Part shown: positions 19,429-61,700 of the stretch, one piece after another | Layout: each line of letters opens with the position of its first letter | How positions within the stretch are numbered: position 1 is the first letter of the stretch | NCBI GenBank assembly: GCA_965637545.1 | Contig: OZ281497.1 | Coordinates: 19,778,001 to 19,842,000, forward strand | Length of the DNA: 64,000 nt | Direction: 5' to 3' | DNA from: Phallusia mammillata | Lineage: Eukaryota | Position numbers and translations under genes: made by a program | The notes under the pieces: generated by a model | The model's input: the letters and a program-made list of their open reading frames with translations, nothing else | Database searches by the model: none | Told to the model about the DNA's origin: nothing

Positions 19429-22400
19429 ATGAATCGAAGGCAATTCTATCCACCAAGAAATACGTTTCCCGGGTTGCTACCCCCCTCCTATTTGTCTACA
19501 CCCCCACTTTCATTTTACCCCCAGCAGTATCCAGTTGCCCCGATGAGCACCGCCCCCATGATTGCACAACACGGTAAATGCAATTAAACTCATCAAAATT
19601 TGTTTCTGAGCTATTTTTTGTTGTCACGCACTAGATCTAACATTTATGTTCTAAAACCTTTGGTCTATGTAATTCGCCTAATTTTGTCTGGTTACAAATT
19701 CAACAAACACTTTCTTTATTAAATTATAAACATAAATGCCAGAGAACTTTCAAGCTCAGTTGACAACCTGCACTCATGATGACAAAATCGATTGTCTTAA
19801 CGTCTGCAAGATATATTCTATATACACAAGTTTTCTGGCAGTTATGTTTTTAACCAAATTACTTTTTAAGTCCGTGTATGGAGTTCCTAATTAAACGTAA
19901 GAAATATTTCTGATTTAATGTGTATTATAACACAAGGGCGTTGACAATTATAGATTTCTGTCCAATGTGCGTGAGAATGCCGGTTATGTCACCATACCAG
20001 CAATGTCCGCAGTATATGTACTACTCCGGTATGCCAATGGCTGGACCGGATCTCTGCAGAATTTTGCCTGGTGCCAGTTACGTGCCAGCAGCACCCAGTG
20101 CGATGCCTTACCCTCCCAATATGCAGGTTCCATTAGGTAAGTGATTTACACGTCTTCCAACTACTCAATCAATTAACAAGACTTAAAACGTCAGCAGGTA
20201 TGTCTCTGTTGAGACAAACTGGTGGATTGCCGCCTGATCCCGGCCCTCAAGCCTTTGGTGCGTCGCGTTCAAATGGAAATCGGTTCCCAAACACTAACTT
20301 GGATACAGGAGCTAACGAATGCACGCAAGGTATAGTGTTGATTGGTTTTGACCTAATGTAATCAACTTGCGTTTAAAGATTTTTTTAGATATAAAACATT
20401 TGCCTCGCACGTAAACATGTGAAAAGAGATCTCACAACTTCCTGTAGCCTAAACCACAGCGCGAGTTAAAAAAAAGCGTTTCCACCCCTACAGTATTAAA
20501 TGTCAAACTCATTTCGACTCTTAGCGGGCCTATGTTGTGGCAAATTAAAGTTTTGGTTTGAATGTATGACATGACAGCGTCAAGTTAACGGTATCGCCGA
20601 CAAGGGTTACAAACATATTGCATACAGATGGGCGCCAAACGACAAGAAGCAGAAGCAACTTGCGAGGAAGAGGCAGCAGAACTCAGAATCGAACAAGGAA
20701 TTCTAATTTCAGCCAAAGTCGAAATACTTCAATTGCAGCATCAAAAATTAAGCAGCGGTATTCTATATATCGCAAGCAAACAAACAGCAGAAGCAAATCT
20801 AAAGAAGTAAATTAACAAATGTGAAACTCTTGCATGTTTGAGTAGAATTGTCTAAATTTTATTCCTGTTAGAAAGACCACACTCGATCAGGAGATCAGGC
20901 GATGCCATCTGTTGAACCGGTGGAATTAAGCAGCATTGCGTGCATTGAAGAAGGTCGAGGTAAACAAAGCAAAGCAATATTAGTATGTTGCCATCTAAAA
21001 CATATAGCTAAATTGTTAGCAATTACAACCAGATACTGACTACGATAGCTGGGAAGAGGTTGAAAACGAAGACGTCCCTGTCACAAATGCTTCCACTTGG
21101 TTGGACGACACCCGTATGGTGATGGAAGCACCTGCATTAACCAACAGACACAAGCATATTGGAGCTCATTCCAAACGTATGTTTTTCCCAAATATAAATT
21201 CTGTACAATGTACATCTATATTTTTGTATTTGATCTCACTTTCTAAGTTGTTTTATATCTAATGAAGTAATTTAACGATGTTTTTTCCCAACATGATTTA
21301 TATTCAGAAACTACGAAGGGGCGACTACCGATGGACTACACCCTGATCAATGATAAGACATTTTCCTACGTCAACTACAATCCGGAAATGGTGCCACTCA
21401 AGCTTGACAAGATGTGGATACACGTAATAGCACTTACTTACCAAAACAACGAACCAACGTAAATCAAAACTGTTTATATTTTGCAGAGTGGCTCGCCTAA
21501 GCCACAAAGAAAATCCGCTGTTGGTCCTACTGTCAGCGGTACGTCACCACAGCGAGCAGACTCGGCGTTAAAAACAATCAAACCAGCTCTGTGCATCGCT
21601 GCAGCCTCCGGTGAAGACACGACGGGAACCTGCGAAATGTCCATTAGGCATTTGACCAACGATGAAGTTTATTATGTCGTACGACCTAAAGCCAAACCCT
21701 GCAATGAAAACAACAAAACAGACGCTGCATCAAAAAGCTGCCAAGGCTGCAACCACGTTCCGAAATGTGCCACTTGTTGCTGTACAGTTAGTAGGTCGCT
21801 TGTTGATAGAGGAGTAATGCAAGCTCCAAATCAAGCTTCGCAAGTCATTCAAATGTTTGGCGACTCGGAGATTTGGGACGCAGGTGACATGAACAACAAG
21901 CAAACACCTGTTGCTTTGCCAGGGGCTGAACCCCGTGCGCGAAGACTTTCGGCCTTCGCCAACATATCCGGTGGTTCGTCAAGCGATAAACACCAGTCGC
22001 CTCTTCCACTGGATCCAAACAACAACAACAACAACGAGAACGAACCGACGGAAAGAAGCAAGGAGTTCTGGTGGGACAGGAGCACTGACATCGGTTACCG
22101 CGAAAGAGGGAGAAATGTTGAACACTTTATTCATCCCACAACTTTAGGCGAGGATGAGCTTGATGACACCAGAATATCTGGGGCTTTTATTCAGGAGGTT
22201 GATGATTTTGTCGTGGTAGACACTGCTCCTAAAGCCTCCACTACACAGGCAATTGATGTCAATAACAACGAATCTGATAATAAAAACCAACAAGATTCTT
22301 TGATGATTGAAGAAGGGAATGCTTCCCAGGACAGACGGAAACTGGACGTTGACTGGAATTCAATACGTTCCGTTGTACCAAAAGAATATGCAACAAGGTC

Positions 22401-25400
22401 GTACACACAAGAAGGTACGGCAGAGGTGTACGACTTTGACAGTACTCTGGGATTAGTATCATGCCCTGGAGATGAATCAGTCAGACTTGCAACATCAAAA
22501 CACTCAGCAACATCGTCCAATGGGCATAGACCGATATCTGAACAGGACAACGCCATTGTCGCATTTGTGGAACGCCCTGGTGGTCCAGACGGGCGCTGTG
22601 AAAATGAATCATCAACATCCAGCCTTACAATCAGCTTGTCGCCTTCGGAAGAAATTCCACAGGTCGTTAACACATCTACAAGGCACGTCGAAGCTAGGAG
22701 AGTGACTACGCCGAGTTCTAAGGTACGTCCAGTTAAGAACTGGGGAAAACACGACGTGCGTTTGCTCTTGATCGCCACAACGGGATCAAGTTCTCCTTCA
22801 TCGACCACCACTTGGTGTCCTCCGTCAGCAAGCACGCCGTCCTTTTCAACCACAACCTCAGTCCATCCACACCTCGTCACTGGAAGAACTGTGAAGAGCA
22901 CAGCAAACGAAAAACTGCAATCGATTCAGTCGCAAAAACAGGCAAGGTCTTTGCCCTCCAGTCCAAAGGGGCGGTTGTTTCATCTAAGTGCAAACAAACA
23001 CAGAAGCATGGCAGCTAGTGCTGAGTGTATACCGGCGGTGTTGCAGCAAAATCAACAGTGGAACACCATCACAGAAACTCCAGATCGCGAGTTACAGATT
23101 GATTGCCAAGATTTTAATAAACCTTCAGCGGCAGATAGATACGATCGGCGTCGTACTGATTCGCCAGATTTTTGGAGAAAGCCTTCCGAAAACCGTCACA
23201 AAACTTATCTTCTAACTCCCGCATCTTCAGAGCTGCTGGCTCAATCACCAACAAAGGACACCCAAGCAGACCAAAATGTGGAAGCTGTAGCGGCTATATC
23301 TAAGTACGGTAACGATGCTACAGCAACTTTGACAATTAAACCTATTCATCAATCCCGAGCTTCGGGTATTCCGCGCCCAAAGAAGAGCAAAGCGCCTCAA
23401 CACGTTCATCATTCAGACCAACATGAACGTATTACAGCAAAGCCAATCACAGATACAGACAGACCTGCTGTCATTGCGCAAGAAACAACACAGCAGGGTA
23501 AAAGCCTTTTGTCAGGTACTGCTTCAACCTCGCCAACCAGCTCTCACACCGTCACCCCGGCAACCACACCAGAATTTGGTCGTTTGGGACCAACAGGTTC
23601 AAAAACTGTGGTGAAGACTAAACGGCGAAGCAGTGCTTCATCACGCAACAAGCGCGGGGCAAGAAAAACTATTATAACATCGGTTAACGCTTCCGAAAAA
23701 ACATCAAAGAAGACCGACAAGGTTAAGCGCGCGCCAACGCCTGCAGAAAGAAACAAAACCAAGGAAAAGTTTTTCGTTCCTGCTAAACCAACAACTGGAA
23801 GCTACAGAGAACCTGCAAGTCGGCATCAAAAATTGTCACTTTCAAATCGAGTTGTAAGTGGCCGAGCTCCTACTCGTCGTTCGCCGCGGACAGCGCGGTC
23901 AACTTTGTCCACAAAACACATTTCCACAGAGAAGGCGTCTAAAGAACCACCAACCAAGCCCGAGAAATCAGCCGCATCACAAAGAGCCATGCTGCGTTCC
24001 GAGTTAGCTCGAGTGTTTGCTGCACACGAACATGCCCAGCCACCAGCGGTCAAACATACCACCGGTTCTCATTTGCCCGATAAAAGCAACAAAACCAAGA
24101 GACCTAAAAATACAGTGTCTACTCAACAAACTTCTGTTGAAAACCAACCTGATGTCGCGTTACCAACTTCCACTTCTACTGTCACGTGCGTTCTGGACAC
24201 AAGCGACGTTGAAGACGTCACTCACGGTCACGTGCATTCGTCCATACAGACAATCGTTCACAAGTTGGTGAAACAAACCACTTCACATCACGACAAACCT
24301 GTCTGCTCGCCATCGTTGGCGGCGCTACGTGAAAAGGGTTTGTACCGATTCCAGGCAGAAATCTACCAAACAGTCGTGGACACGTCTTCTGCAAGGGTCA
24401 CCACGGTTCAAAAACGCGCAAGCACCGCCCCCAATTCGCCAATACATAACTCGACTCTTGCAAGTAGCAAAAGAAGCGTTAGTCTGTCTGATGTATTTTA
24501 CGACTCCACTGTTGATCCTTCTCTCTCCGTTTGGCATACCAAGTTACAAGAAGATCAGGACATCTCAAGTAGTTTTATAGGTCTTCTTTCTCATCAGGAT
24601 CATGAAGTTGATTCCAGTGTAAATCAATCCGCGTCGGCTGAACACCCAGATGAGCCTCAGTCAATAGTGCAACGGTTTCGGGACATTCATGGCAAAGGAT
24701 CTACTTACGTTGGCTTCAGCCCTCCTACAATGACGCCACCCGAAAAGTTTTTGTCACCCCAGAAGCGTGTAAATGAAGACTCACTGATATATCAAGCCAA
24801 TAATGATAGGCCTTCCCTTCCGGAAGAACCCTTGGTTGATGAGAATCTGAAGTCAATGGATGATACCCGGTCTTCTCGTGTTTTGAGCGAGGATCTTGAA
24901 AACGAAATTCGCAAGAAGGTTGAAATACTTCTGCACTCGGTCAAAGAAGATTCGTTACAGAGTAATCGCGGATGCTCAAGTTTTACGGCTAATTCGGAGA
25001 AAAAGGCCAGTGTTGGATCTGCGCGAGGACGAAAGAAATCTTTAGATCAATCGACACAAACCAGCGACCTTAAAGATCAAGGCAGCCCCAATACGGCCCA
25101 ACAGTCAAGCTTAAAGTTAAGCGTCCCTCCAAAGAAACCTCCTAGGAGCAACAGTCCAAGCAATCTGAGCAACCGAATAGCTAGTCAAGAATTGCAACAA
25201 ACAAAAACGGTTGTAACAACAACTGCAACTAGTACCGTTAACGGTTCACCGATCGTTCCATACTATCCGCTTTTGACCAGTTTCTCCCGCTTTTCCCCGC
25301 ACAGACATCCGCATTTTCTGTCTCCGACGTTTATTCCGGTCAACATAAGTCAGCAGTTTTACCGTGCACCGGGTGTAGCGTGGCCCAACGTGTCCACTCA

Positions 25401-27958
25401 TTCGCAATCTTCAGACAACAGCATCGATCTGTCCGCCGAATCTCAATTCAAAACTTCTCACACCGACCAGTCACAGCGACGGGCTTCAGATAGCGGGAAC
25501 GTGCAGGATATGGCTCCAAGCGTTGTGATGTTACCGGCAACCGGCATGCTCCCTTCTTATTACATTCCCCCAGTTTATCCGGACGCTCCCCGTCCCAAGG
25601 CTCCAGCAGGTAGAAAATCTAAACCTGTCCTGCGTCGTAGGCGTTCCTTTCCAGGCCCGATTAGTTCATCATCCGTGGCTAAAGCGAGGTTGAATCGTCG
25701 ATACGGTTTGGCGAGAAACTACGCCGCTGTTAAGTTTGCTAAACCTACACCTCTTGCTCTTAACCAGTCGCACCCGGTAACCCGTCCACAGGTCGTACGA
25801 CGACCCCGCTTCGCCCGAAGCAGCTTGTCCGATGACGTAGTGTTTCAAAGCATTGAACAACGGTCAGGGGCTCCAGTGTTCGTAACGAAACCAAAGGTAC
25901 AGCTTTAAAGATAAGTATACGTTAAACTTATTTACGTAAGCGTATAACGACGCCTGTTGCACATTGCAGACCCCTTTACCTAAAGCAGCTGATAAAGAAG
26001 CAGCGGAGAAGCCCACTAAGAATGAAACAAATGATGCTGAAGGTAGAACAAATGATGTTTTCTTGTTTGGGTATACTTGTTAAATTTGTGGTGATTAGAA
26101 AAAAAGGCTGCTGAAGTGTGGCTTTCCTCGGGAGGTGATACTGGCTATACATCGGGTGCAACATCTTCTGGAAGAACAACTCCAGAAGCAGTAGATTCTC
26201 ATCCTGAACGACCCACTCAGAGATTGGATGCGATACCAGAAGACAGCAAGCAACAGGTACAAATTTGAATGAAAATATTTAGCGTAGACAAACCGTTTAA
26301 AGGATGAGAGTTTTGCAGGTAGATACAAGTGTACAAGATACTAGTGTACAAGATACAACTAAGGACGTGTCTGAAGATCATCAGGATGTTGTTGAAGACA
26401 AACATAGCAAAAGTAAGATAGTTTAGTAAAAAATGAGCCAAGTTTTACACGTATTTACACGGTAACTCTACAACACCGTGCTGCTCGTAGACCAGCTTGT
26501 TTTGGTGGAATACCTCTTTTGTGCCATGCCTACTTCTGTTTGTATATGAGTGTATTATGGTTGGTATGCATGGACACTCATAAGGCTAAAGTATACAACA
26601 TCTTCTTATTTCAGGCAAAAAGGTGACACACTTTCAAACGATTAAGCGAATCAAACGGTTTATGTCGACGAAAAAAGTTGGCAAACACGATCACACAGTC
26701 GCTAATCCGGAGCAGATTCGGACGCAGCAAGATGCCAGTGAAGTAGAAGACTCCCGGATGTTCCTCAGAAAAAGCAAAACTGACACCAAGTTACCTAAGA
26801 CATCCGACACCACAGTTACACATGTTGGCAAAGGTATGTTGCTGAAAATAAAACCGAAATAACAGTTACACTACTTTGTTATAATTTCAGGAGCAGCGGT
26901 CAGAGAGATTTTCAAGAAGTCTAAAAAGTCCTCAATAGATAAAGGAAGCAACAGTACATTAAAGGGTACAGAGGAATTTAAAAACGTCTCTGCTAAAATT
27001 GCTAGTCGTCCAGGGGCGGAAACTAATCGACCCCCAGGGCCACGAGAAAACTATGACATGAAACTAGCTCTTCTTAAACCAAGTTTCGTGGCTGTAGCTC
27101 CTTCTGAAATAAGGCCGGTCGAGGACCAACAGAAAAACGTGACACACATAGCTGGTGAGTAAAGTTTACTTTTAAGTTTTACTAGATACCATAGTATAGA
27201 ACCGAATACCTTTTGCAAGCTTTGAAATTTAGCCTACAAATTAGTAACTTTAGTAACAAATTAGTAATTGAGAAAATTCAATATGGGTTTAGGGTGAACG
27301 CGCTCTATAAAGCAACGGGCTCGCTGTGTTTTTATTTGGCAACAACACAAGCTCAAAACTAGATGGTAAAGAGTTGTTTAAATATTTAGACAAACCAGCA
27401 CCAAATCCCGGAAGTGCTTTGGACACAAGTATCCAACGAACAAACACTCGACGGTCCGTGTCAACCCCAGGAATACGCATCAACTCTGAGACGGGTGACG
27501 TCATCGATGAGGAAAAATCGGCGCATACTACTTCTATGGCGCAACATCAACCTATGCACAAGATTCTGTCGAGCACGGCGATTGATGATGACAGTTTGGA
27601 AGATGGTGCATCACAATCAAGGACTCTCCAAAATTATGGGGTTAACAGTGAATTGCAGGTTACTGACGAACAGTTAAATCTCATGGGGAAAAGCAGGGAA
27701 TCCACAGTTATATAATTTTTTTGACTTGTAGAAGAGTGTTTATTTTTTCACTTTGTTTGCAATACAGATTTTGGCATTAAGTTACGACGCTTATTTGAAA
27801 GCTAAGTCTTCTCTACGGCATACTTTAGATCATAGTGCAAGGGTCCCCTTGAACTGTCGGATAACCATCAATACCCGTTGCTCCCTACTCACCAACAAAA
27901 GAAAAACTTAGATATGTCGAATTCTGAATATAAAAGGAAGGAGTTGTTCTCACAATAA
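19429..27958 (+). CDS. Uncharacterised ~2200-aa Ser/Thr/Pro-rich, largely low-complexity protein (about 15 coding exons)
   Basis: Phase-compatible exon chain: 19429-19573, 19954-20137, ~20198-20330, 20628-20806, ~20871-20959, ~21032-21177, 21308-21423, 21487-25896 (the 1475-aa ORF), 25970-26042, ~26099-26257, ~26319-26412, ~26615-26834, 26891-27154, 27363-~27659, 27768-27958. No globular domain recognised. Confidence 0.75.
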
Positions 27959-39669: not shown

Positions 39670-41566
39670 TTTGGGGCTATTTGGTCTTTTATAATCTCAT
39701 ACAATAATCAGGTTGGTTAAGGAGCAACAATTTAGCTGTTTCCCTATTAACAATCATCTGTTGGATGATATACACTAGAAACAACAACAATTTAGATTAA
39801 TAACACACAGGATAATTTGTCTGTGTGTATTAAGTCCTGGGTTTGGGTTTTAATTTTCTAAAAGCAGACAGATAAAGGTGTCAAACATACACCAAAAGTT
39901 CTGCACCAATTTACCGCAAGTATTGTGTAACAATAGGCCAATTCACACGTTTTTAGTAAGAAGCTCGTTTTTTGGACAATAAGAAGGAAGAAACACTCAA
40001 CACACAATACTAGAGGCTTAAAAACTAAGGTTGATTTATTGAAAAGAAATACAATTAACAGTAGCTACGATTATTTATAATTGCTTCGAAATTAAAAATA
40101 GAATCATTCTTTACACACATATAATTGAAATTGAATCATAACAGTTAACATTGAGTAACGGATCACAAATGAAACTGCATCATAACCATCATTATTAAAA
40201 TAGAATTAAACTTGCTAATTACAAACCAAACAAATTTACAGAACAACGTGTGATAATCTCCTCCCGCTCGCGACATCCAGCGCATGCAACATTTTACTTA
40301 CTTCACATGAGCGAGCGTGCAGTCGTACGTCTCAATCAAACATTATTTTGTAAGTGCGAAACATACTTCTTGCTTGAATTTAATCACAATTTGTTGACTG
40401 TTTATCACAAAATAAATATAAATATGATTTCTTTTCAATAAGTGTCAATCAGAAAAACTTGGACAGAAAACAAGCTCGGTTAAGCCGCGGGACATTTGTT
40501 TTATGCTAACCGCTTGCAAAGGTTATTTTGTTATTTAATGTGTAGGCTGCATCACCAAAATAAATCCGCTTTTTAGGTCAAGTAAGCGTAGGCAATAAAC
40601 AAATCGGGCATGTTTATGAACACTAATTGACAACCGATGTTTTAAACCGACTAGTTGGCAAAATTCTGACAAACATGTGGCTATACAGGTGCACAACAAA
40701 AACAGTCAAAATTCAGGTCAACAGCGCATCGACGGTTATGTCACAGCGCAAAAAACGACCCAGGGGATTGGTTTCTAAATTCAAATGAAAATTTAATGCA
40801 TGTCATGTTTTTGCATTATGAGTTGTAGGATTTACAGCACATGTTGACACAGAAACCTGACAGTTTCATTATCGACTTAAATGCAGTTTTTTATAGTATC
40901 CAAATAGAAAACGTAGTTTGGCATTGGAGGAAACTTTGTTTATGGTAAATCTTTAGAGGAAAGGTTAACAAACAGAAATGTCTTACAAAAAAGATGTAAA
41001 AATGACAAGCGCCAAGATATATCATGAAAGGCAACGAGTCAAAGGAATCGTGGCAATGGTAGCCAACCCGACATACAGTAAAACATTTGTTTCTGTGTCA
41101 TCTTATGGTCCAATAAAGCAATCAATGAAACATGACATCGGAAATGAAACTAAAGGCAATCCGACTGGTTTTGCCCGTCGGAATTCTCAAGAGAAGGTCA
41201 ACAATTTCCAATGCTTGGAAGCAAGGCTACTGCAGCAGGTATTACCGATATTGATTTGTGCAGCAAGCGCGTTCTCTTTCGTACGACAGCGGGGCTTTTG
41301 CATTATTTATCTGCCAGCAGTACTAGTACCGCACGCAGAAGCTTCAGTTAATATACCTCTTTTCCTGCTATTGTGTACTGGTTGGTTGCGAGGAGGGACA
41401 AGGATACTAATGCAATAAAGAAGCTTTTCATTTATAGCAGAGAAAAGGATTTGAAATCGAAAGTTTCTACAACGTTGTGTAGAATGCAAAGGCATTGCTA
41501 ATTTATTAAAAAGCAGGCGTTCTCTGTTCCTGCAAATTTAAGAATTGCGGTTTACAGGGGAGAAAT
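39670..41566. promoter_or_regulatory. Divergent (head-to-head) promoter region of eIF4B and the Piccolo-like gene; probable non-coding eIF4B exon near 40300-40340
   Basis: The two genes diverge from this interval; minus-strand gaa|gtaagt donor at ~40300 lies in a local CpG-richer patch. No TSS can be determined. Confidence 0.45.
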
Positions 41567-52784: not shown

Positions 52785-55700
52785 TTAACGCCGGAGCTCT
52801 ATCTTGTTGTTGAGCTGATCACATTTTCGGAAAAGGCGCTTGACATTGCGAAGCATATGCTTGCCGCTTGTGTACCACTCCTTCACAACGCTTTCCACGT
52901 TAACCATGAGTCTTCCGGTCATTGGGTCTTCATGTCCAATCACCAGGTATTCGTTGTCTGCATAACAGAGGCAATTTTTACACCAAGCTGTCTCACAACT
53001 TTGGAAATTACACTGATAAATGCTTTAAACTGGACTTAAAAGAAGCGTGCTAAAAGTGATCAAAGTTTGCTTTTTTAATCGTGTTCCAAAAACGTTGGAC
53101 ATCGACAAGTTAAAGAAGCAAAAACTAATCTAAAATTTTAATTGTAACCCGTAAAAATCTGACAATCCAAGCAATTATAGTTTGACATCACTTGCGACTG
53201 GGCAAACAATATTGTTATTGACCAGAAGAATTCAAAGGCCGACGTAGAATTTCCCGGTGACAAATGTCTCGTATTGACATAACCCCACTTAAAATCATCG
53301 GAATTTTCAACGCATGAAAGATGAGTAGACATGTTGACGGCGTTGTTTTCTGGATGAGCGACAGATCTATTTGTCGCATGAGCGAACGCTCAAAGAGTAA
53401 TTGCCCGTTTTGAAATCAAAACAAGTTACCTCATATTGATCACGAGAAAGGCATATGACAGCTGTGCCTCGGTGAATAACATGTTTACCCACAAAAATAT
53501 CAGGAGATTGGTTAATGGTCTTTGACACCATGAGTTATTTTTAAAGTAATTGGTTTGAAAGACTTCTTCCAAAATGGCAGAGATTTGTGACTGAACAATC
53601 GATTAAAGTTCGCTGGCCTGGGTCGTTTTGCGTACTTCCTCTTTATGGGTTATATTTGCAGGCAAATCTTGTTTTTAATGGCGGGGTTTTACTTGAAATT
53701 ACGCATTACCAACCGAAACCAAACTAAAAACAATTGACCGTGTTGGATACAGAAACTTTTTGAACTTACTGGGTTTAAGAACTGGACAAGTGCAACCCAT
53801 GATGGTCCACGACTCCGGATACAAGGTAGCTTTTCCCCGTCGAATTTCGACGCTGTTCCGCTTGATCACTCTTCGCACAGCCACGGAAAGGAAAGTATAC
53901 GTCATCATGTCATGTGCCCCCTTGATGCGAACCCTTACGGCTGAACAAGAAAAGGTGTTGGAATAAGAACCGACATTTTGTTTTTTCTAGGGTCGAAGTT
54001 TGTTCTTCTTTTACGATAGCAAACTCCTGAATTTTATCATGGAATCACAGATATAAATCCTGGCAAATTGGTTCTGGGAATCGTTCCCTGTTCTATCGTC
54101 ATTATTGCATCGAATTCCACCCTTCATTATAATTATCACAAGTTTGGGAAATGTTTATTTCCAGGTTAAAATCAGTTGACAATGTTAAAAAGAACAAATT
54201 AATCTCGCTAAAAAGCATCTTCAGTGTCTTATTCAAATAGAATCTGGGAATCACAGATAGCACAGAATTTTTAAACTTTGGTTAGTCTGAAAAATACACT
54301 ATTATGGCTACAATACTTTTATCCAACTTTTTTTTGAAATGGTAAAGTTTTGTACAACAAAGCTATTTCCTCTCTATCCACATGACCTGGCGTGGTCTGA
54401 GAGCATAATATTTGCCTTCGCTAGTCGACAAACTATTAGAAATTCCCCGAACCGAGGGTGATGTTTACAGACCCAGCGTACGTTAGCCGCTGTGACGTAG
54501 GCGCTTGTCAAAATCCGCAGTAATCCCGTTTTCGAAAACGAAATGAAGCAAACCTAAAAGACGCGCAGATTGACCGTCAGGCTTTTGCTGCCTTACAAGT
54601 GCTGAAGACAGATCAACGCTAAAACCCTTAACCCGTCGCGCGACCATGAAATCACAGTGTTCGGGGCCGCAAATTACGGCTCGGCTTACCGTAATCGTAT
54701 TTTCGCCTGCAAAAGCTTGCGGTGTCGTCGATTTCTCGCTGCTTGCAATCGCACGCATCTGCAAAGTAAAGGTTGGTGTTGGGTTCACATTGAAAACTGT
54801 TATCTCCTTGTGGTAAACGTGTTTGTGGTTCTTGCAGCACGACTTATCAACCACAAAAATCTTGATAAATAGCTTATGATCAGAATAGAAGGCCTTAGTG
54901 TTCAACCTCATGTTTTCTGTACAGCAGAGATCACAAAACATGGTGATGAACAGATTGGTGGTTGAGCATAAAGGATTTTTTTCACACTTGCCAAACCTTT
55001 TACATCTCGATTTTAATGAAACATAACATGCATATCACCCAGCGATATACGTATCGTTTCACACCCAGCGACGCAGTTTGTGTTCGACGCAAAGCTATGT
55101 TGTCAAAGCGAAGCAAATTCGCTCCATATCAGGCCAAATTAAATTTTTCATTCGTCACGTGATACATCCTTAAGTCACAAATCGCTTCGTCAAAGCCAAC
55201 GTCTTACTCACTGCTGCTGATGACACACAAGTTCTTTATAGCGGCAGCCAAGCGGCCACGATCCAATATTTGTAAATCTATCAGCACTATCCACAAACGA
55301 GCTTCAGCGGTTGGCGTAAACCCACACGTATAAGTCCACCGGATTACGTCATTTTGTGTGGGCGAACTGCTTGGTTTTGTTACATGTTGTGGGGAGATTT
55401 ATGGAAGAGTGCCATTTCGCACCCGTGACTTGCAGTTGTGTGGTTAGTGGTTACGACCGAAACTTTCCGCTGTGAGCAAGTGTCGCCCAGAGAAACAAAG
55501 TATGTACATATTAAGCCTGTATCGATATGTATGCAGTCGTATCGACGTGAGAATATCGTTTTCATGTATAAATCTCGTACCCAATGGACAATTCCTCCAA
55601 AACATTATGCTTCATCACAAAAAACTGGTTACAATAGCCTTTATAAGGACATGTGTAGCAAATTAGATGGCATATAATTTATTCTAAGAATCGTTGGAAC

Positions 55701-58700
55701 TTATTTAAATGTACTTTGTCAAATTGGAATCGCTTTCTTTGGAAATTGTTTTAGTCGTGCAAAAAGCAATATCCGTGCTTATTACTTAAAAAAAACACTT
55801 CTGTCTTACTTGGATTTTTCCAGTTGTAGGCCGACGAGTGAGCACGCGCCTCATTTTCGTCCTCGTATCGCCGCACCACCACGCTGTCCCGATAACTCGA
55901 AGCCATCCTGTCTTCGTCAGGGTAATTTGGCTTCACACTCCATTCCCTGAACGATCATCATCCATAATAACATGAATTCGAGGTAATGCATTGAAATGAA
56001 ACTAAGTCGAGAAAAGTACCTGTCTTGTTCGTCCAAGTAAGGATAATTGTAAATCGGATATATGATTTCGTCTGTTACAAACGTAAGTTCGCAAGCTCCA
56101 GATATCTGTACAGTAAATAAATACAACGCCTGATGTGAAGTAGTAGAATAACGTTAATAGCTCTACGTATGTCACATGATAATTTAGAGATGACAGACAC
56201 GGTCACGCCAGTGAAAGTCTTGTAAAGAAATCACAACACAGGGCAGGTTGGGCGAAAACCTTAATCCGAACCGGCACAGTTAGCCGTGGGAGTGTCGGGT
56301 CATACACGATTTAACCACAATGACAGCAAATATACGTCATATCTATGGAACGAGGAATACAAATCTCTGTATATACGTACAGAGTCGCAGTGTTCACACA
56401 GACACTCCGTGCACCCGGAAGAGCTGAATCCCCAGTGACCAGCGAGACAACTTCCACATCTCCTGCCTCCAACACCGGGCTTGCACTGACACTTGCCAGT
56501 GTAGTAGTCGCACGGCAGGCGACCCGTGACACTGTCAGCTTCGCCTTGGGTGCCAACAGGATCGCACAAACATTCTGAATAATTGAAACGGGAGTCAAGT
56601 TTACTCCTGCATATTTCATGGTGATTTTATGGACCTAACGCGTATTGTGTTCGACACTATACACATAGCTTGTGGATAATTCAATTAGGTGGTTTTTCAA
56701 CATTCTTTGGGACCACTGACAAATGACAAACTATTTTGTGTTTAGGAAGTTTAAAGGGTGAGATTGTTTTTGGAAACAAATAAGTTCAAAATAAGGATAT
56801 AACATGAGACGAGATTTTTACTCGGCAAAAACAATTGATTTGCGACTCTTTTAACAGTCTCTCACGGTGGCTTACAATATGTAAGAAATCAAAGTTATGC
56901 ATAATTGTGCGCAGTTCGCAGTGATTTAAAGTGGAGAAAATACGATGTCCATCCAATATAATAAATGCATCTGGTAATTACCAACCCTGACAAACGTCTT
57001 GATCCGAGAGGACCGAGTCCATTCTGCGGAAAAATCCAGCTTTGCATCCGTCGCAGTTTCTTCCCTCCGTGTTGTGCTGACATCCTTGGCAAACTCCTCC
57101 ACTCACGTTCCCGCTCGCCGACCACAACTCGTGATCAAATGTGCAATTGTTGGCATGACCATGGCAACTGCATCCTGCAGTGGGAACGAATTTTATAAAT
57201 CTTTTTTTTTTCGTTTTTTTTTCTAAAGTGAATAATGGTCAGTCATTAAGGCTATGTAGAAGATTAGGAAAGTGTGTAAAGAAGCAAATACTTAGTGCTC
57301 AGGGTGCGAGAAAGCGATGTAGAGTTGGAGAACCTACTTTTGCATGGGTTTGCAGCACCCGTGTCTCCATTTCCAGGTCTCCACGGAGCGTCGTTGTAAA
57401 GCGGTAGGCACTCGTCACAATGATCTCCCGCAGTGTTGTGCTCACAAATGCACTTTCCATGCACCTGTAGTCACACACGCGTTTAGATAGAGACCACAAG
57501 CGGTAATCACTGTCATTATAATCATACAACGTAAAATATGTTGCATTTGTGGTCGATACCAGATGGTGTTTCTGCTTTAGGGCAAGCCCGTACTTTGTTT
57601 TTGAGTGAAGCTGGATAACAGTAAAGGCCATTAGGCAAGTGTTACGCGGTATTAGCGGTTTAGAATGAGACAAGGATCATCTGTGCCTGTATGCATTCTT
57701 ATGACGCTCTACCTTTATGTTTTTTTGACTTGCGCGAGCTCATATTACCAGGTGTCAATCAACCGAAACCTGAAACAGTGTAATCCCCGATTAGGCGCGG
57801 AAACCAATTGCACCAAACCAGTTTGGGCTTCACTTTAAAGTTCGCTTGCGACAAAACACCCTTACTACTATTGTACTGAAAGTGTTTGAACTTAACAGTA
57901 TTGGACCCTCCAACAGGCAGCATGGCCATCGACGAACAATGATTGGAAAATTTTTCCAGTAACGAAATCAGTCGACAAATATCGTGGAATATATATTCCA
58001 CCTAATGGCTTTTTTAGTTCCTTATTCAAATAGAATCGTATTGAAATGACTTGCCCTAATCCAAGATTTGGGACCTTTGTCAGCACAGAATCCCGCCCAC
58101 GAACTATTATCCATCCGTAAGTGTCGGTACTTGATGAAATTTCCCGTCATTTGTGCACCCGTGTGTCGTGTCATCGACATTGAAATAAAATCGTCGCTTG
58201 GCTTAGCACAAATCCCATTGAGTCGCGCGAACAAATAAACAATTGACATTGGCGCATGCGCACTTGCCGTCAGTCAAACAACGGACATTGACAGATTTCC
58301 AAATATAATAATGACGTCATATGAAGAATGACGTTTGGCGACTGCATCAATAGATTATCGCACATCTCTGTCGATTGGGAGATATGGATAAAAGCGTTAA
58401 TGGACTTTTCAACACAAAATGACTTCCATTGTATTACGAAGCGACAAATAACGGCTATGGTTTAGGCGGGCGTCAAGGAAGATTTCACTATAATTTCTTG
58501 AAAGTTTTCAAAACATAACACGAACATAATTAAAGGGGAATATTAATAAACAGCACGACCTATCGACGGGTCTATATTGCGATAAAGATAGAAATCCATT
58601 ACGTAAGTGATACGATATTTGATGGCTTTATCTATATTTATGCCTCAGCCATCTCTGAGTTTAATTTCGCGTTTCGAAAAGTAGATACTGGCAACAATAC

Positions 58701-61700
58701 ACGATGCAGTTTGTTTTATTTATGAGTTAAAATATCCGTTTGCCGAAATTCTACGTTTTTATGAAGGTTTACATTTCTTTAATCACACATTTTATTATCT
58801 GACTTTTTTTTTTATCAAGGTTACCATCAGGCTATGTTCGTTACAAAGCCAACTGAGTGTTAAACGGAATACTTTGTGTTATGTATAATTTAGGCTTGGC
58901 GAGTAAAATCGTTTCTACCTTTGTTTCTAAATTAGGTTAAACTGCAAGCAACAGTTTATCTTTTCAGCGAAAAGGGCATAGTTTAAATGGAAACCCTGTA
59001 AATTAACACAGGTGGGTCTTTGTGTGTTTAAACATGAATATATATGTTTCCATAATTGAATCTTACCACATCTTGTTCGTTATCGACGGGATCGCTTCCA
59101 TCGTCGTGCAAAGGCACACACGTGTCGGCGTGTCCATTGCAAAAACAAGTCCCTCGTACGATCAGGTCGTAGATTGCGAAGGGTGCCAAATTCTTAGGAG
59201 TTATATCCAGGTCCACTTGGTCCCTCCTTGACGAATACTCGGTCGTGCGACTGGCGTTCACACAATGTGGGCATGTTTGCGGTAACCACATCCTGATCCG
59301 CAGGTTGGTGATTTTTAGAAGATGCCGCGCCTCTGCACTGTAGGGGTCGTCGATGGGGGATAGAGGATTAAGGACGCGATAGGTGACCTGGGCAAAAGAA
59401 ATGAAGTTTTCAGAGGCCCATTCGATGATCGATGTCTGACAGATTTGCAAAATTGCCAAACGGCCAGTGCCCAGATAACATCGCAAAGGGACAAAGATCC
59501 TACAGCGATCCCGTTAAAGTGTTGTGGGCTAACGCTGCTGATGTAGAAGATGCGAGAAAGATTAGAATGTTGTTGTTTTTGATGCGGATGTCAACGAGTG
59601 TTGACGATGTTTTGCCCTTGAAGCAAGCAAGTATGGGCCAATATGTGGCTCGATGTTGCGATTTGCCCTTTTTTGGTGTATTGGATTTATTAAGCCAAAC
59701 CAGCGATTCCCGATTTTTTTAATCTTTTTCACAACGGTTCCCACATATTTTTGCATTTTTGCAATTTGAACTATGAATTTTCTATCGCCCTAGTAGAAAG
59801 TTCCACGCTTTTAAGTAACGTCTTAACTCGAATTGTAGCATTAATAGATTAGGAAAAAGGCTTTTCGGTGCCCCCTGAAAACCAGGACTGCTTCAACGAA
59901 AACTTGGACCCAATGGACTGCAGAACTTGGACCCAATGGACCACGTGAAGTATGTACTGATATAAACCCAAATATTTTAGCAGCCAATTTGGTGAATAGT
60001 AACTGTCATTGTGGTTTCCAGAGACATTGTGTTTGTTAGATCATTTCGCATAGTTTCGTTTACATATACACCGCAGCTTACACTAGAAACGACATGCTAA
60101 AACAATTGAGATCCCTGTTATATCCAATCTTCCCGGATTAATTCCACACACAGCAGTCACGATCTCCATTTGATACAACGTATAGTATACTCCCCTAAAC
60201 AATTACGTAATGCAGCGCAACACAACATGTGTAGTTCGCTGTTCCAGGATCGTGCGAAATCGTCCGATTTATTCGGCACTCCTTCACCAAGCAATGTAAC
60301 AGCGACCGGCTGAGGTTCGTAATGCTAAATGACGCCAAGCGCAAGGGAGAGTCGGCAGCCATTACATTACAACGGGGTCGATTCGGGCGACGGAAAAATG
60401 ACATTCGCTTTCGGGACAAAGAGGACCTTTGTGTCGGATCGACTGCGGGCGGACAAGCCGCCCCGAAATGCCGCGATTTTGGGTGAAAACAATGCCAAAG
60501 ATGGAAGTTTAAGCACGCGTCGATCGCCAATTGGAATGTGAGAGCGGGTAATGTTGGTTCAAGCTGTGACGCGCAAGTTTTGATGCGATTGTTTTCTTAC
60601 CGCAGCTATTTCGCAAACCGAGTTTGTAGCAACAAATTGCAAAACCGTGCTGTTCCGTTATGGGGAATTGGGGATGAATACAATTTAACGACGGATGTTT
60701 TGCCGCATCCTAACCACATGAACTTAAAAAAACTAGACAAAGACCCAAACCGAATGCCCGCTCTTGAAAACTCCTGCAGAGTGTAGGCTACATTAGCAGT
60801 GAGAGTTGATGTACGCACACAGATTACGCAGCAATTACAATACACTATAGCGTATCTATAGATAAAAAAATGTCAGAAGGTTAAATTAATTTTACAAAGT
60901 ACACCATGCTTATTTTAAAGCCACGAAGCATATTTGTAATATCATTTGGGTTTTGTATTAATTAAAACTTTCCAAGGTGTGTTGCTACATTGCTATGGTC
61001 GTACAATACGTTCAAACAATAAAAAATACAGGTAAAAAAGCACTTTATCGTCAAATAGGAGATCAAGCGTTGTGTTTTGAAAATGAACGTTTTGGTGTAA
61101 TTGTGTGTGTATATCAGTCAAGGTGTTGACGGTTCACGTGTAGCGGTATTTGCGTTAATCTGCTGTCTCAACTACGCAACGCTCGATAAGGTGATAAGGT
61201 GTTTTCACAACCACGGCTTAGCGCTTAAGTGCTGATCATGTAAACATTGCCGAATTTGGTTAGCAACAAATCCAAGCTCCTGAGAAAAACGTTTGCAGTT
61301 TTGTTAGTAACTGGTTACTTCGTTTCAAAATTAATTATTTAAAACATTTTTATGAATCTATATTTTTCTAATTTACTTATTGACGAATGGAAATATCAGC
61401 GACCTGAGGTGCTAGAAAAACGCATTTATAGCCCGTCTTGCTGGCCTAACCGTATAGGCAGAAATAAAAAAGTTTATTTTCTATTGATTTTTAGGACATT
61501 CGCCCTGGTAGGCCGCACAAAGTTCAACCAGCTACTTCGTTCGAATGCCAAAAGTGACAACCTATTGTTTGTTTATTGCGGCAATGAGGCACTCGACATT
61601 CCGCGAAAGAAACTGGCGCGCTCCACCTACCTCGCCCTTCGTGCAGGGCAATGGATCGGAATAACGGGACGTGCACAAAGCTTCGTCCACATCCACATCG

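What the first reader, a model, noticed from the sequence alone, without database searches (positions are those of the whole stretch)
54136..58092. Two perfect spliced-leader 16-mers embedded in a diverged repeat within Netrin-4 introns
Seen: ATTCTATTTGAATAAG occurs exactly twice (54243-54228 and 58036-58021), both sense to NTN4. The flanks are homologous but clearly diverged: downstream TTGTC(A/G)ACTGATTT..CTGGAAA..TTT(C/T)CCAA, upstream ATTCTGTGCT..TCCCA. The 16-mer has no mismatch. Established: this is the Ciona trans-spliced leader; genuine SL RNA genes follow it with a GT donor and an Sm site and are tandemly arrayed. Here it is followed by AC and GA, so neither copy is a canonical donor. 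A rough estimate at ~31% A and T gives about 2e-4 expected hits per window, so two is not chance. Inference: a dispersed SL-bearing element family. It could be SL-RNA gene relics, a mobile element whose RNA is trans-spliced and re-inserted, or an intronic SL mimic/decoy under selection. I know of no description of this arrangement.
Basis: partly seen in the sequence, partly recalled or inferred. Interest (0 to 1): 0.82.

Follow-up and report, generated by a model that had tools for sequence, protein, structure and literature searches.

The report
Spliced-leader-tagged retroelement copies in netrin introns
The two leader sequences are the front ends of two decayed DNA copies of a jumping-gene RNA that the sea squirt's own trans-splicing machinery had tagged with its spliced leader; they are not leader genes or decoys, and the scan has already met the same kind elsewhere in this genome.

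Summary
ATTCTATTTGAATAAG occurs exactly twice (54228-54243 and 58021-58036, minus strand). Each copy is preceded by G, and each lies sense in an intron of a netrin-4-like gene.

About 90 nt downstream of each leader is homologous at 62% identity. The upstream similarity is chance.

Contigs from two independent DNA runs show that both copies belong to dispersed repeats. Copy 1's family has summed depth roughly 100-fold over single copy; copy 2's has about 10-fold.

Many other members of copy 1's family lack the leader. At that exact point they carry a conserved pyrimidine tract ending in TAG, which is a 3' splice acceptor. Other members start with G plus the leader next to unrelated AT-rich flanks.

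Three nt after the leader, copy 1 has a minimal type-I hammerhead-like core with one core substitution. Copy 2 has a more decayed homologue. Rfam calls neither.

The best reading is retrocopies of hammerhead-bearing Penelope-like (or retrozyme-like) tail RNA that received the leader by trans-splicing.

The leader is intact because it was added fresh to each RNA, not because it is under selection.

The scan found this kind before on other DNA of this genome (s1-375378, s1-351708, s1-408599). I found no published description for tunicates.

The parts
54228..54243 (-). Copy 1: exact 16-nt spliced-leader sequence at the 5' end of the retrocopy
   Evidence: Exact match. Identical to the Ciona SL (PMC1488885, Table 1).
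54244..54244 (-). Extra G directly 5' of the leader, also present at 58037
   Evidence: Read from the sequence. 11 other contigs in run X2 match through 54244 and only then diverge. It could come from reverse transcription of the cap, or be part of this species' leader. Not resolved.
54197..54224 (-). Hammerhead-like core of copy 1: CTGAAGA-T-GCT[TTTT]AGC-GAgA-[TTAA]-T-T. It starts 3 nt after the leader. One core substitution (A14 to G) is at 54204.
   Evidence: It is the only hit of my descriptor on both strands of the window at up to 1 core mismatch; shuffles give 0.1. At 54204, 99% of the depth of other copies restores GAAA. Helix II is supported by RNAalifold with one compensatory pair. 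Rfam gives no call.
54136..54227 (-). High-copy body of copy 1, including a conserved hairpin GGAAAT/ATTTCC at 54147-54162
   Evidence: Summed contig depth is 63039 against about 330 in X1, and 3515 against 34 in X2. Loose ends lie at 54136/54144/54147 on the 3' side and at 54229/54244 on the 5' side.
54054..54135 (-). Low-copy 3' extension of copy 1, reaching the candidate target-site duplication
   Evidence: Only 1-7 contigs per run share this stretch. 176-nt contigs cover 54058-54199.
54247..54259 (-). Candidate target-site duplication TATCTGTGATTCC, upstream copy. The downstream copy is at 54041-54053.
   Evidence: Exact 13-mer on both sides of a 193-nt insert. About 1e-3 expected by chance.
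58021..58037 (-). Copy 2: G plus the exact 16-nt spliced leader
57988..58017 (-). Decayed hammerhead-like core of copy 2: CTaAAaA-A-GCC[ATTA]GGt-GgAA-T[ATAT]A-T-T
   Evidence: It aligns with the copy 1 core. The majority letters of its family at 58000 and 57998 restore GGC-GAAA. Rfam gives no call.
57936..58020 (-). Body of copy 2 that is homologous to copy 1 (62% identity), with hairpin GGAAAA/TTTTCC at 57945-57957. The repeat probably runs on to about 57870.
   Evidence: Depth is about 9-30 times single copy in bins 57756-58143, rising towards the 3' side.
53770..57465 (-). Host netrin-4-like gene. Exons: 53770-53940, 54690-54758, 55810-55945, 56019-56105, 56381-56574, 56986-57173 and 57337-57465. 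The next exon upstream begins at 59068 and the next exon downstream ends at 52957.
   Evidence: mRNA contigs of runs X8 and X10 with GT..AG joints. Loose ends located. Pfam and PDB matches.

Best explanation
Each 16-mer is the 5' end of a short, non-coding retrocopy inserted into a netrin-4-like intron. Copy 1 is about 105 nt of high-copy core, or about 190 nt to its candidate target-site duplication.

Proposed mechanism:
1. The source is the hammerhead-bearing tail (pseudo-LTR region) of a Penelope-like element or a retrozyme-like derivative of one. This RNA carries a 3' splice acceptor (pyrimidine tract plus TAG) 3 nt upstream of the ribozyme's CUGANGA box.
2. The host spliceosome trans-spliced the 16-nt leader onto that acceptor. 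This produced a capped RNA made of the leader plus the tail.
3. A retroelement reverse transcriptase copied that RNA to its 5' end, probably giving the extra G, and inserted it.
4. The two copies come from two already diverged subfamilies. Each received a fresh leader, so the leader is perfect while the bodies are 62% identical.
5. Both ribozyme cores are now mutated, and the copies are decaying passengers.

Shown here: the repeat nature of both copies, the acceptor in leaderless relatives of copy 1, other leader-headed copies, and the intron location.

Inferred: the trans-splicing event itself, the identity of the reverse transcriptase, the cap origin of the G, and the Penelope affiliation.
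For: -, repeat nature: both sites sit in repeats in two independent DNA runs.
-, acceptor: 27 contigs in X1 and 23 in X2 leave copy 1 at 54229 with a conserved continuation (agreement 0.8). Read on the minus strand this is ...CCCTTTTATTGCTCTTTAT-AG|ACACTG.
- that tract has 16 of 19 pyrimidines, P about 0.003, richer than any of the eight host acceptors (10-15).
-, other leader-headed copies: 11 X2 contigs match through the leader and the G, then run into unrelated AT-rich flanks.
-, Penelope-type arrangements: 5'-truncated copies, one head-to-tail joint (58037-ACAAG-54144) and three opposite-strand joints. PMC8557442 and PMC6765202 describe the same arrangements for Penelope-like elements.
- hammerhead-like core with a palindromic stem-III loop, as reported for Penelope hammerheads (PMC6765202), with covariation in helix II.
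- 13-nt candidate target-site duplication around copy 1.
- no GT donor and no tandem array.
- at 62% body identity, 17 of 17 matching positions has P about 3e-4. That fits a freshly added leader.
Against: - Rfam finds no hammerhead in either copy, even when only about 150 nt is searched.
- My descriptor was written after I had seen the sequence, and it allows an extra base between A9 and G10.1.
- Helix I is weak in both the leader form and the parent form.
- No reverse transcriptase or GIY-YIG gene was linked to the family.
- No target-site duplication was found for copy 2.
- The acceptor-bearing relatives are known only as a 30-nt loose-end consensus of contigs. They were shown only for copy 1's family.
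- I did not test that this species uses this leader. That rests on the Ciona literature and on earlier scan notes.
- Summed contig depth is not a copy number.
Confidence: 0.7

Rival explanations
1. The leader was captured once and then inherited. On this view an ancestral leader-headed copy became a master element. Its descendants, including both subfamilies, carry the leader as an ordinary part of the element, kept intact by constraint in the master copies.
For: Both subfamilies share G plus the leader and the same architecture. Earlier notes describe LINE families that keep the leader as their 5' head (s1-375379, untested here). One search lists no common variant from 54205 to 54243, so the whole 5' part is conserved and not just the leader.
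Against: Leaderless members with an intact acceptor at the junction outnumber leader-headed ones about two to one in copy 1's own family. At 62% body identity, an inherited and unconstrained 17-mer would be intact with P about 3e-4.
Confidence: 0.15
2. These are relics or pseudogenes of SL RNA genes, dispersed at the DNA level.
For: They contain the exact leader exon.
Against: The leader is followed by AC and GA, not GT. No Sm-type site was seen and there is no tandem array. The body is shared with leaderless repeats that have an acceptor at the junction. Upstream flanks are unrelated.
Confidence: 0.03
3. These are intronic leader mimics or decoys kept by selection in the netrin gene, for example to bind trans-splicing factors or to regulate the host transcript.
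For: Two perfect 16-mers, both sense, in one gene.
Against: The same leader-headed unit occurs at many other loci with unrelated flanks. Copy 1 differs from its family majority at only 4 or more of about 86 sites, so an intact 17-mer is expected about 40% of the time without selection. With thousands of windows scanned, two copies 3.8 kb apart is not surprising. Same orientation for both has P = 0.25.
Confidence: 0.03
4. A reverse transcriptase switched template from the element RNA onto SL RNA, giving a chimeric retrocopy of the kind seen in U6-L1 chimeras. No trans-splicing would be involved.
For: Chimeric retrocopies with small nuclear RNAs at the 5' end are established knowledge for L1.
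Against: Only the 16-nt exon is present. It ends exactly at its splice donor and is joined exactly at an AG acceptor of the parent. A template switch would be expected to carry the intron part of the SL RNA and to join at variable points.
Confidence: 0.04

Closest known systems
Leader-tagged Penelope hammerhead retrocopies noted earlier in this scan (s1-375378, s1-351708, s1-408599, s1-405488; same genome, other DNA)
   Same: The leader sits 3 nt before the hammerhead box. The acceptor lies in the 5' strand of stem I. The unit is about 105 nt. The family has a high copy number.
   Different: Both copies here have mutated cores and escape Rfam. Two diverged subfamilies lie 3.8 kb apart in one gene. 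I could not compare sequences with those notes.
DinoSL relics at the 5' end of dinoflagellate retrogenes (PMC5585692, PMC6050394)
   Same: A trans-spliced leader is fixed in DNA, and it marks retroposition of a processed RNA.
   Different: Those cases are host mRNAs in protists. Here the RNA is a non-coding tail of a transposon in a chordate, amplified into a repeat family.
Hammerhead ribozymes of Penelope-like elements and non-LTR retrozymes (PMC6765202; PMC8557442; bioRxiv 10.64898/2026.07.22.740005)
   Same: Type-I layout, very short stem III with a palindromic loop, 5' truncation, tandem and inverted arrangements, and non-coding derivatives.
   Different: None of those papers mentions a spliced leader or trans-splicing. 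There is an extra base between A9 and G10.1. The cores here are inactive as they stand.
Spliced leader found inside transposable-element gene models in Schistosoma mansoni (PMC5832876)
   Same: The authors suggest trans-spliced elements that were reverse-transcribed back into DNA.
   Different: That was a passing remark with assembly error offered as an alternative. No acceptor-bearing parent and no family structure were shown.

Membership tests
Retrocopy of an SL trans-spliced RNA | Exact leader exon at the 5' end of the unit | tested here: met
   The homology between the two copies starts exactly at G plus the leader.
Retrocopy of an SL trans-spliced RNA | The leader is joined where the parent sequence has a 3' splice acceptor | tested here: met
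   Copy 1 only: 23-27 contigs per run carry ...CCCTTTTATTGCTCTTTATAG at the junction. Not testable for copy 2.
Retrocopy of an SL trans-spliced RNA | Dispersed copies with unrelated flanks, and a target-site duplication | tested here: inconclusive
   Unrelated flanks were seen. Copy 1 has a 13-nt candidate duplication and copy 2 has none.
Retrocopy of an SL trans-spliced RNA | The species really uses this leader | not tested
This is the Ciona SL (PMC1488885). No reads call was left to check this.
Type-I hammerhead ribozyme, Penelope type | CUGANGA and GAAA core boxes | tested here: inconclusive
   Copy 1 has CTGAAGA intact and GAGA in place of GAAA. Copy 2 has three core changes. The majority letters of both families restore GAAA.
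Type-I hammerhead ribozyme, Penelope type | Helix II closed by G10.1-C11.1, and a very short helix III with a palindromic loop followed by U and H17 | tested here: met
   Copy 1: GCT[TTTT]AGC and [TTAA]. Copy 2: GCC[ATTA]GGt and T[ATAT]A. There is one extra base after A9.
Type-I hammerhead ribozyme, Penelope type | Score of the Rfam covariance model | tested here: not met
   No hammerhead family at E up to 10.
Type-I hammerhead ribozyme, Penelope type | Stable helix I and self-cleavage | tested here: inconclusive
   Duplex energies are only -3.1 and -3.7 kcal/mol. Cleavage cannot be tested with these tools.
Penelope-like element | Reverse transcriptase plus GIY-YIG endonuclease gene with a matching tail | not testable with these tools
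   No such ORF is in the window. The rest of the genome could not be reached.
Penelope-like element | 5' truncation, with partial tandem and inverted arrangements | tested here: met
   Loose ends at 54183 and 54191, one head-to-tail joint and three opposite-strand joints. These match the descriptions in PMC8557442.
SL RNA gene or pseudogene | GT donor directly after the leader, and a tandem gene array | tested here: not met
   AC and GA follow the leader. There is no tandem repeat.

The most novel reading that the evidence does not exclude
Leader-headed copies may not be dead ends. The DNA copy of the leader ends in AG and has a pyrimidine-rich interior (TTCTATTT). A copy lying sense in an expressed intron, as both do here, could therefore be trans-spliced again at that same AG. 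This would regenerate an identical capped leader-plus-tail RNA without any promoter of its own. The host's trans-splicing machinery would then act as the start signal of a self-renewing family of non-autonomous Penelope-type retroposons.
Probability: 0.1. Interest if true: 0.75.

Novelty: new variant of a known kind. Interest (0 to 1): 0.5.

Why it matters
The leader is added only to RNA. Finding it in DNA therefore proves that these copies went through RNA, and it marks exactly which processed RNA was copied. For Penelope-like elements and retrozymes, whose copying template and mechanism are poorly understood, a natural 5' tag placed 3 nt before the ribozyme gives a direct read-out of the template's 5' end. 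It also shows host trans-splicing shaping a transposon family in a chordate. For annotation, leader 16-mers in ascidian introns should be read as retroelement heads, not as leader genes.

Tried and rejected
- Default BLAST between the two regions found only the 17-mer. Permissive scoring was needed to see the homology.
- Rfam at three scales gave no hammerhead or any other credible family.
- There is no tRNA and no tandem repeat.
- The short ORFs across the elements have no credible Pfam match and no relatives in the word search.
- Attempts to fetch more copies all failed: two metagenome scans and one viral scan found nothing, the findings search by sequence was blank, and the window holds no acceptor-type member.
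- My idea that the leader gives the ribozyme a better helix I than the parent sequence was rejected. With the correct consensus the two duplexes are equally weak.
- The 8-mer candidate target-site duplication for copy 2 is at chance level.
- Whole-unit folding is no better than shuffles.
Full report
**Observation.** The 16-mer ATTCTATTTGAATAAG occurs exactly twice, at 54228-54243 and 58021-58036, both on the minus strand. A two-mismatch site lies at 40191-40206. Shuffles give 0.09 matches at up to 2 mismatches. The 16-mer equals the Ciona spliced leader (PMC1488885, Table 1). Earlier scan notes name the genome as Phallusia mammillata and report use of this leader there; I did not test that. 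The leaders are followed by AC and GA, and both are preceded by G.

**Host gene.** RNA contigs of two runs join seven exons between 53770 and 57465 with GT..AG introns on the minus strand. Their loose ends map to 59068 and 52957. Copy 1 therefore lies in intron 53941-54689 and copy 2 in intron 57466-59067, both sense. The ORF pieces carry Laminin_N, EGF_laminin and NTR domains. The best solved relative is netrin-4, at E = 3e-34 against 1e-16 for netrin-1.

**Flanks.** Default BLAST finds only a shared 17-mer. With permissive scoring the two units align over 110 columns at 66% identity, E = 6e-5, and the alignment starts exactly at G plus the leader. The downstream motif sits at offsets +45 and +42 and scores 29 against 19.4 ± 2.4 for shuffles. 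The body alone is 58/93 identical. The upstream similarity is at chance level.

**Repeat nature.** I laid contigs of two DNA runs from different studies on the stretch at 80% likeness.
- The bin holding copy 1 has summed depth 63039 against about 330 in X1, and 3515 against 34 in X2. The bins holding copy 2 are about 9-fold up, rising to about 30-fold near 57910. These are not copy numbers, but both sites are clearly dispersed repeats.
- The loose ends carry the key evidence. 27 contigs in X1 and 23 in X2 leave copy 1 after 54229 with a conserved continuation (agreement 0.8). On the minus strand this reads CTAATTTTAATCCCTTTTATTGCTCTTTAT followed by AG|ACACTG.
- That tract has 16 of 19 pyrimidines before TAG, P about 0.003, richer than any of the eight host acceptors. 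Leaderless relatives therefore carry a 3' splice acceptor exactly where the leader is joined here.
- Another 11 X2 contigs match through the leader and the G, then diverge into AT-rich, non-conserved flanks. These are other leader-headed copies.
- There are also 5'-truncated copies, one head-to-tail joint (58037-ACAAG-54144) and three opposite-strand joints.

**What the element is.**
- Copy 1 reads CTGAAGA-T-GCT[TTTT]AGC-GAgA-[TTAA]-T-T at 54224-54197. This has the CUGANGA box, a 3-bp helix II closed by G-C, GAAA with one substitution, and a one-pair stem III with a palindromic loop.
- At the substituted site (54204), 99% of the depth of other copies has the consensus A.
- A descriptor scan finds this as the only hit in both strands of the window at up to one core mismatch. 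Twenty shuffles give 0.1 hits on average, and none with a palindromic loop. The descriptor was written after I had seen the sequence.
- Copy 2 aligns to the same layout with three core changes. Its family's majority letters at 58000 and 57998 restore GGC-GAAA. RNAalifold keeps helix II with a compensatory pair.
- Against this reading: Rfam calls no hammerhead at any scale, and helix I is weak.
- Reviews state that Penelope hammerheads are type I with a very short stem III and a palindromic loop. They also state that these elements show 5' truncation and tandem and inverted insertions, and that their terminal repeats can hold introns (PMC6765202; PMC8557442). That matches what one search shows.
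- No reverse transcriptase gene could be linked to the family.

**Mechanism.** The simplest account is as follows. An element tail RNA with an acceptor just before its ribozyme received the leader by trans-splicing. The capped RNA was then reverse-transcribed and inserted.
- Copy 1 has a 13-nt candidate target-site duplication, TATCTGTGATTCC, around a 193-nt insert. Copy 2 has none.
- The perfect leader on 62%-identical bodies (P about 3e-4 if it had been inherited without constraint) fits separate tagging of two diverged subfamilies.
- Copy 1 differs from its family majority at 4 or more of about 86 sites, so an intact 17-mer needs no selection.
- One search lists no common variant from 54205 to 54243, so the leader is not conserved more than the adjoining ribozyme core.

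**Rivals.**
- SL gene relics fail: there is no GT donor and no tandem array.
- A template switch onto SL RNA would not give an exon-exact, acceptor-exact joint.
- A selected decoy is unnecessary.
- A single capture followed by inheritance remains possible.

**Novelty.** Leader relics in retrogenes are known in dinoflagellates (PMC5585692, PMC6050394). A passing hint exists for Schistosoma transposons (PMC5832876). The Penelope and retrozyme papers I read do not mention trans-splicing, and my searches found nothing for tunicates. The scan has already reported this kind on other DNA of this genome. This window adds two decayed members and the acceptor evidence.

**Limits.** I could not fetch other copies, so family-wide statements rest on contig summaries.

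Noticed in passing
window 40172-40206 (minus): A leader-like 16-mer with two mismatches (ATTCTATTTTAATAAT), not preceded by G. TGTTAACTG follows at about +41, close to the offset of the family motif. It may be an older, decayed third copy. The alignment is not significant (E = 0.48).
   Followed up: partly
window 57984-58001: Copy 2 holds a perfect 18-nt palindrome, GTGGAATATATATTCCAC. The two sites where copy 2 differs from its family majority (58000, 57998) both complete this hairpin, and both destroy the GAAA box.
   Followed up: partly
window 54147-54162 and 57945-57957 (minus): A small hairpin near the 3' end of the shared unit is kept through a two-sided change: GGAAAT/ATTTCC in copy 1 against GGAAAA/TTTTCC in copy 2. 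It could be a recognition signal for the reverse transcriptase.
   Followed up: no
window 54317 and 57201: Run X2 carries a 25-nt insertion (behind 54317) and a 15-nt insertion (behind 57201) relative to the window. These are intron length polymorphisms between individuals.
   Followed up: no
elsewhere in the genome (contig joint 58037-ACAAG-54144): A single-copy contig in both DNA runs has the 3' end of a copy-1-type unit directly followed by a G-plus-leader copy-2-type unit. Flanks of other copies are rich in TA repeats on both sides, which suggests insertion next to earlier copies or into (TA)n tracts.
   Followed up: no
window 21481-25908 (+): A 1475-aa open reading frame with no Pfam match at E up to 0.01.
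   Followed up: no
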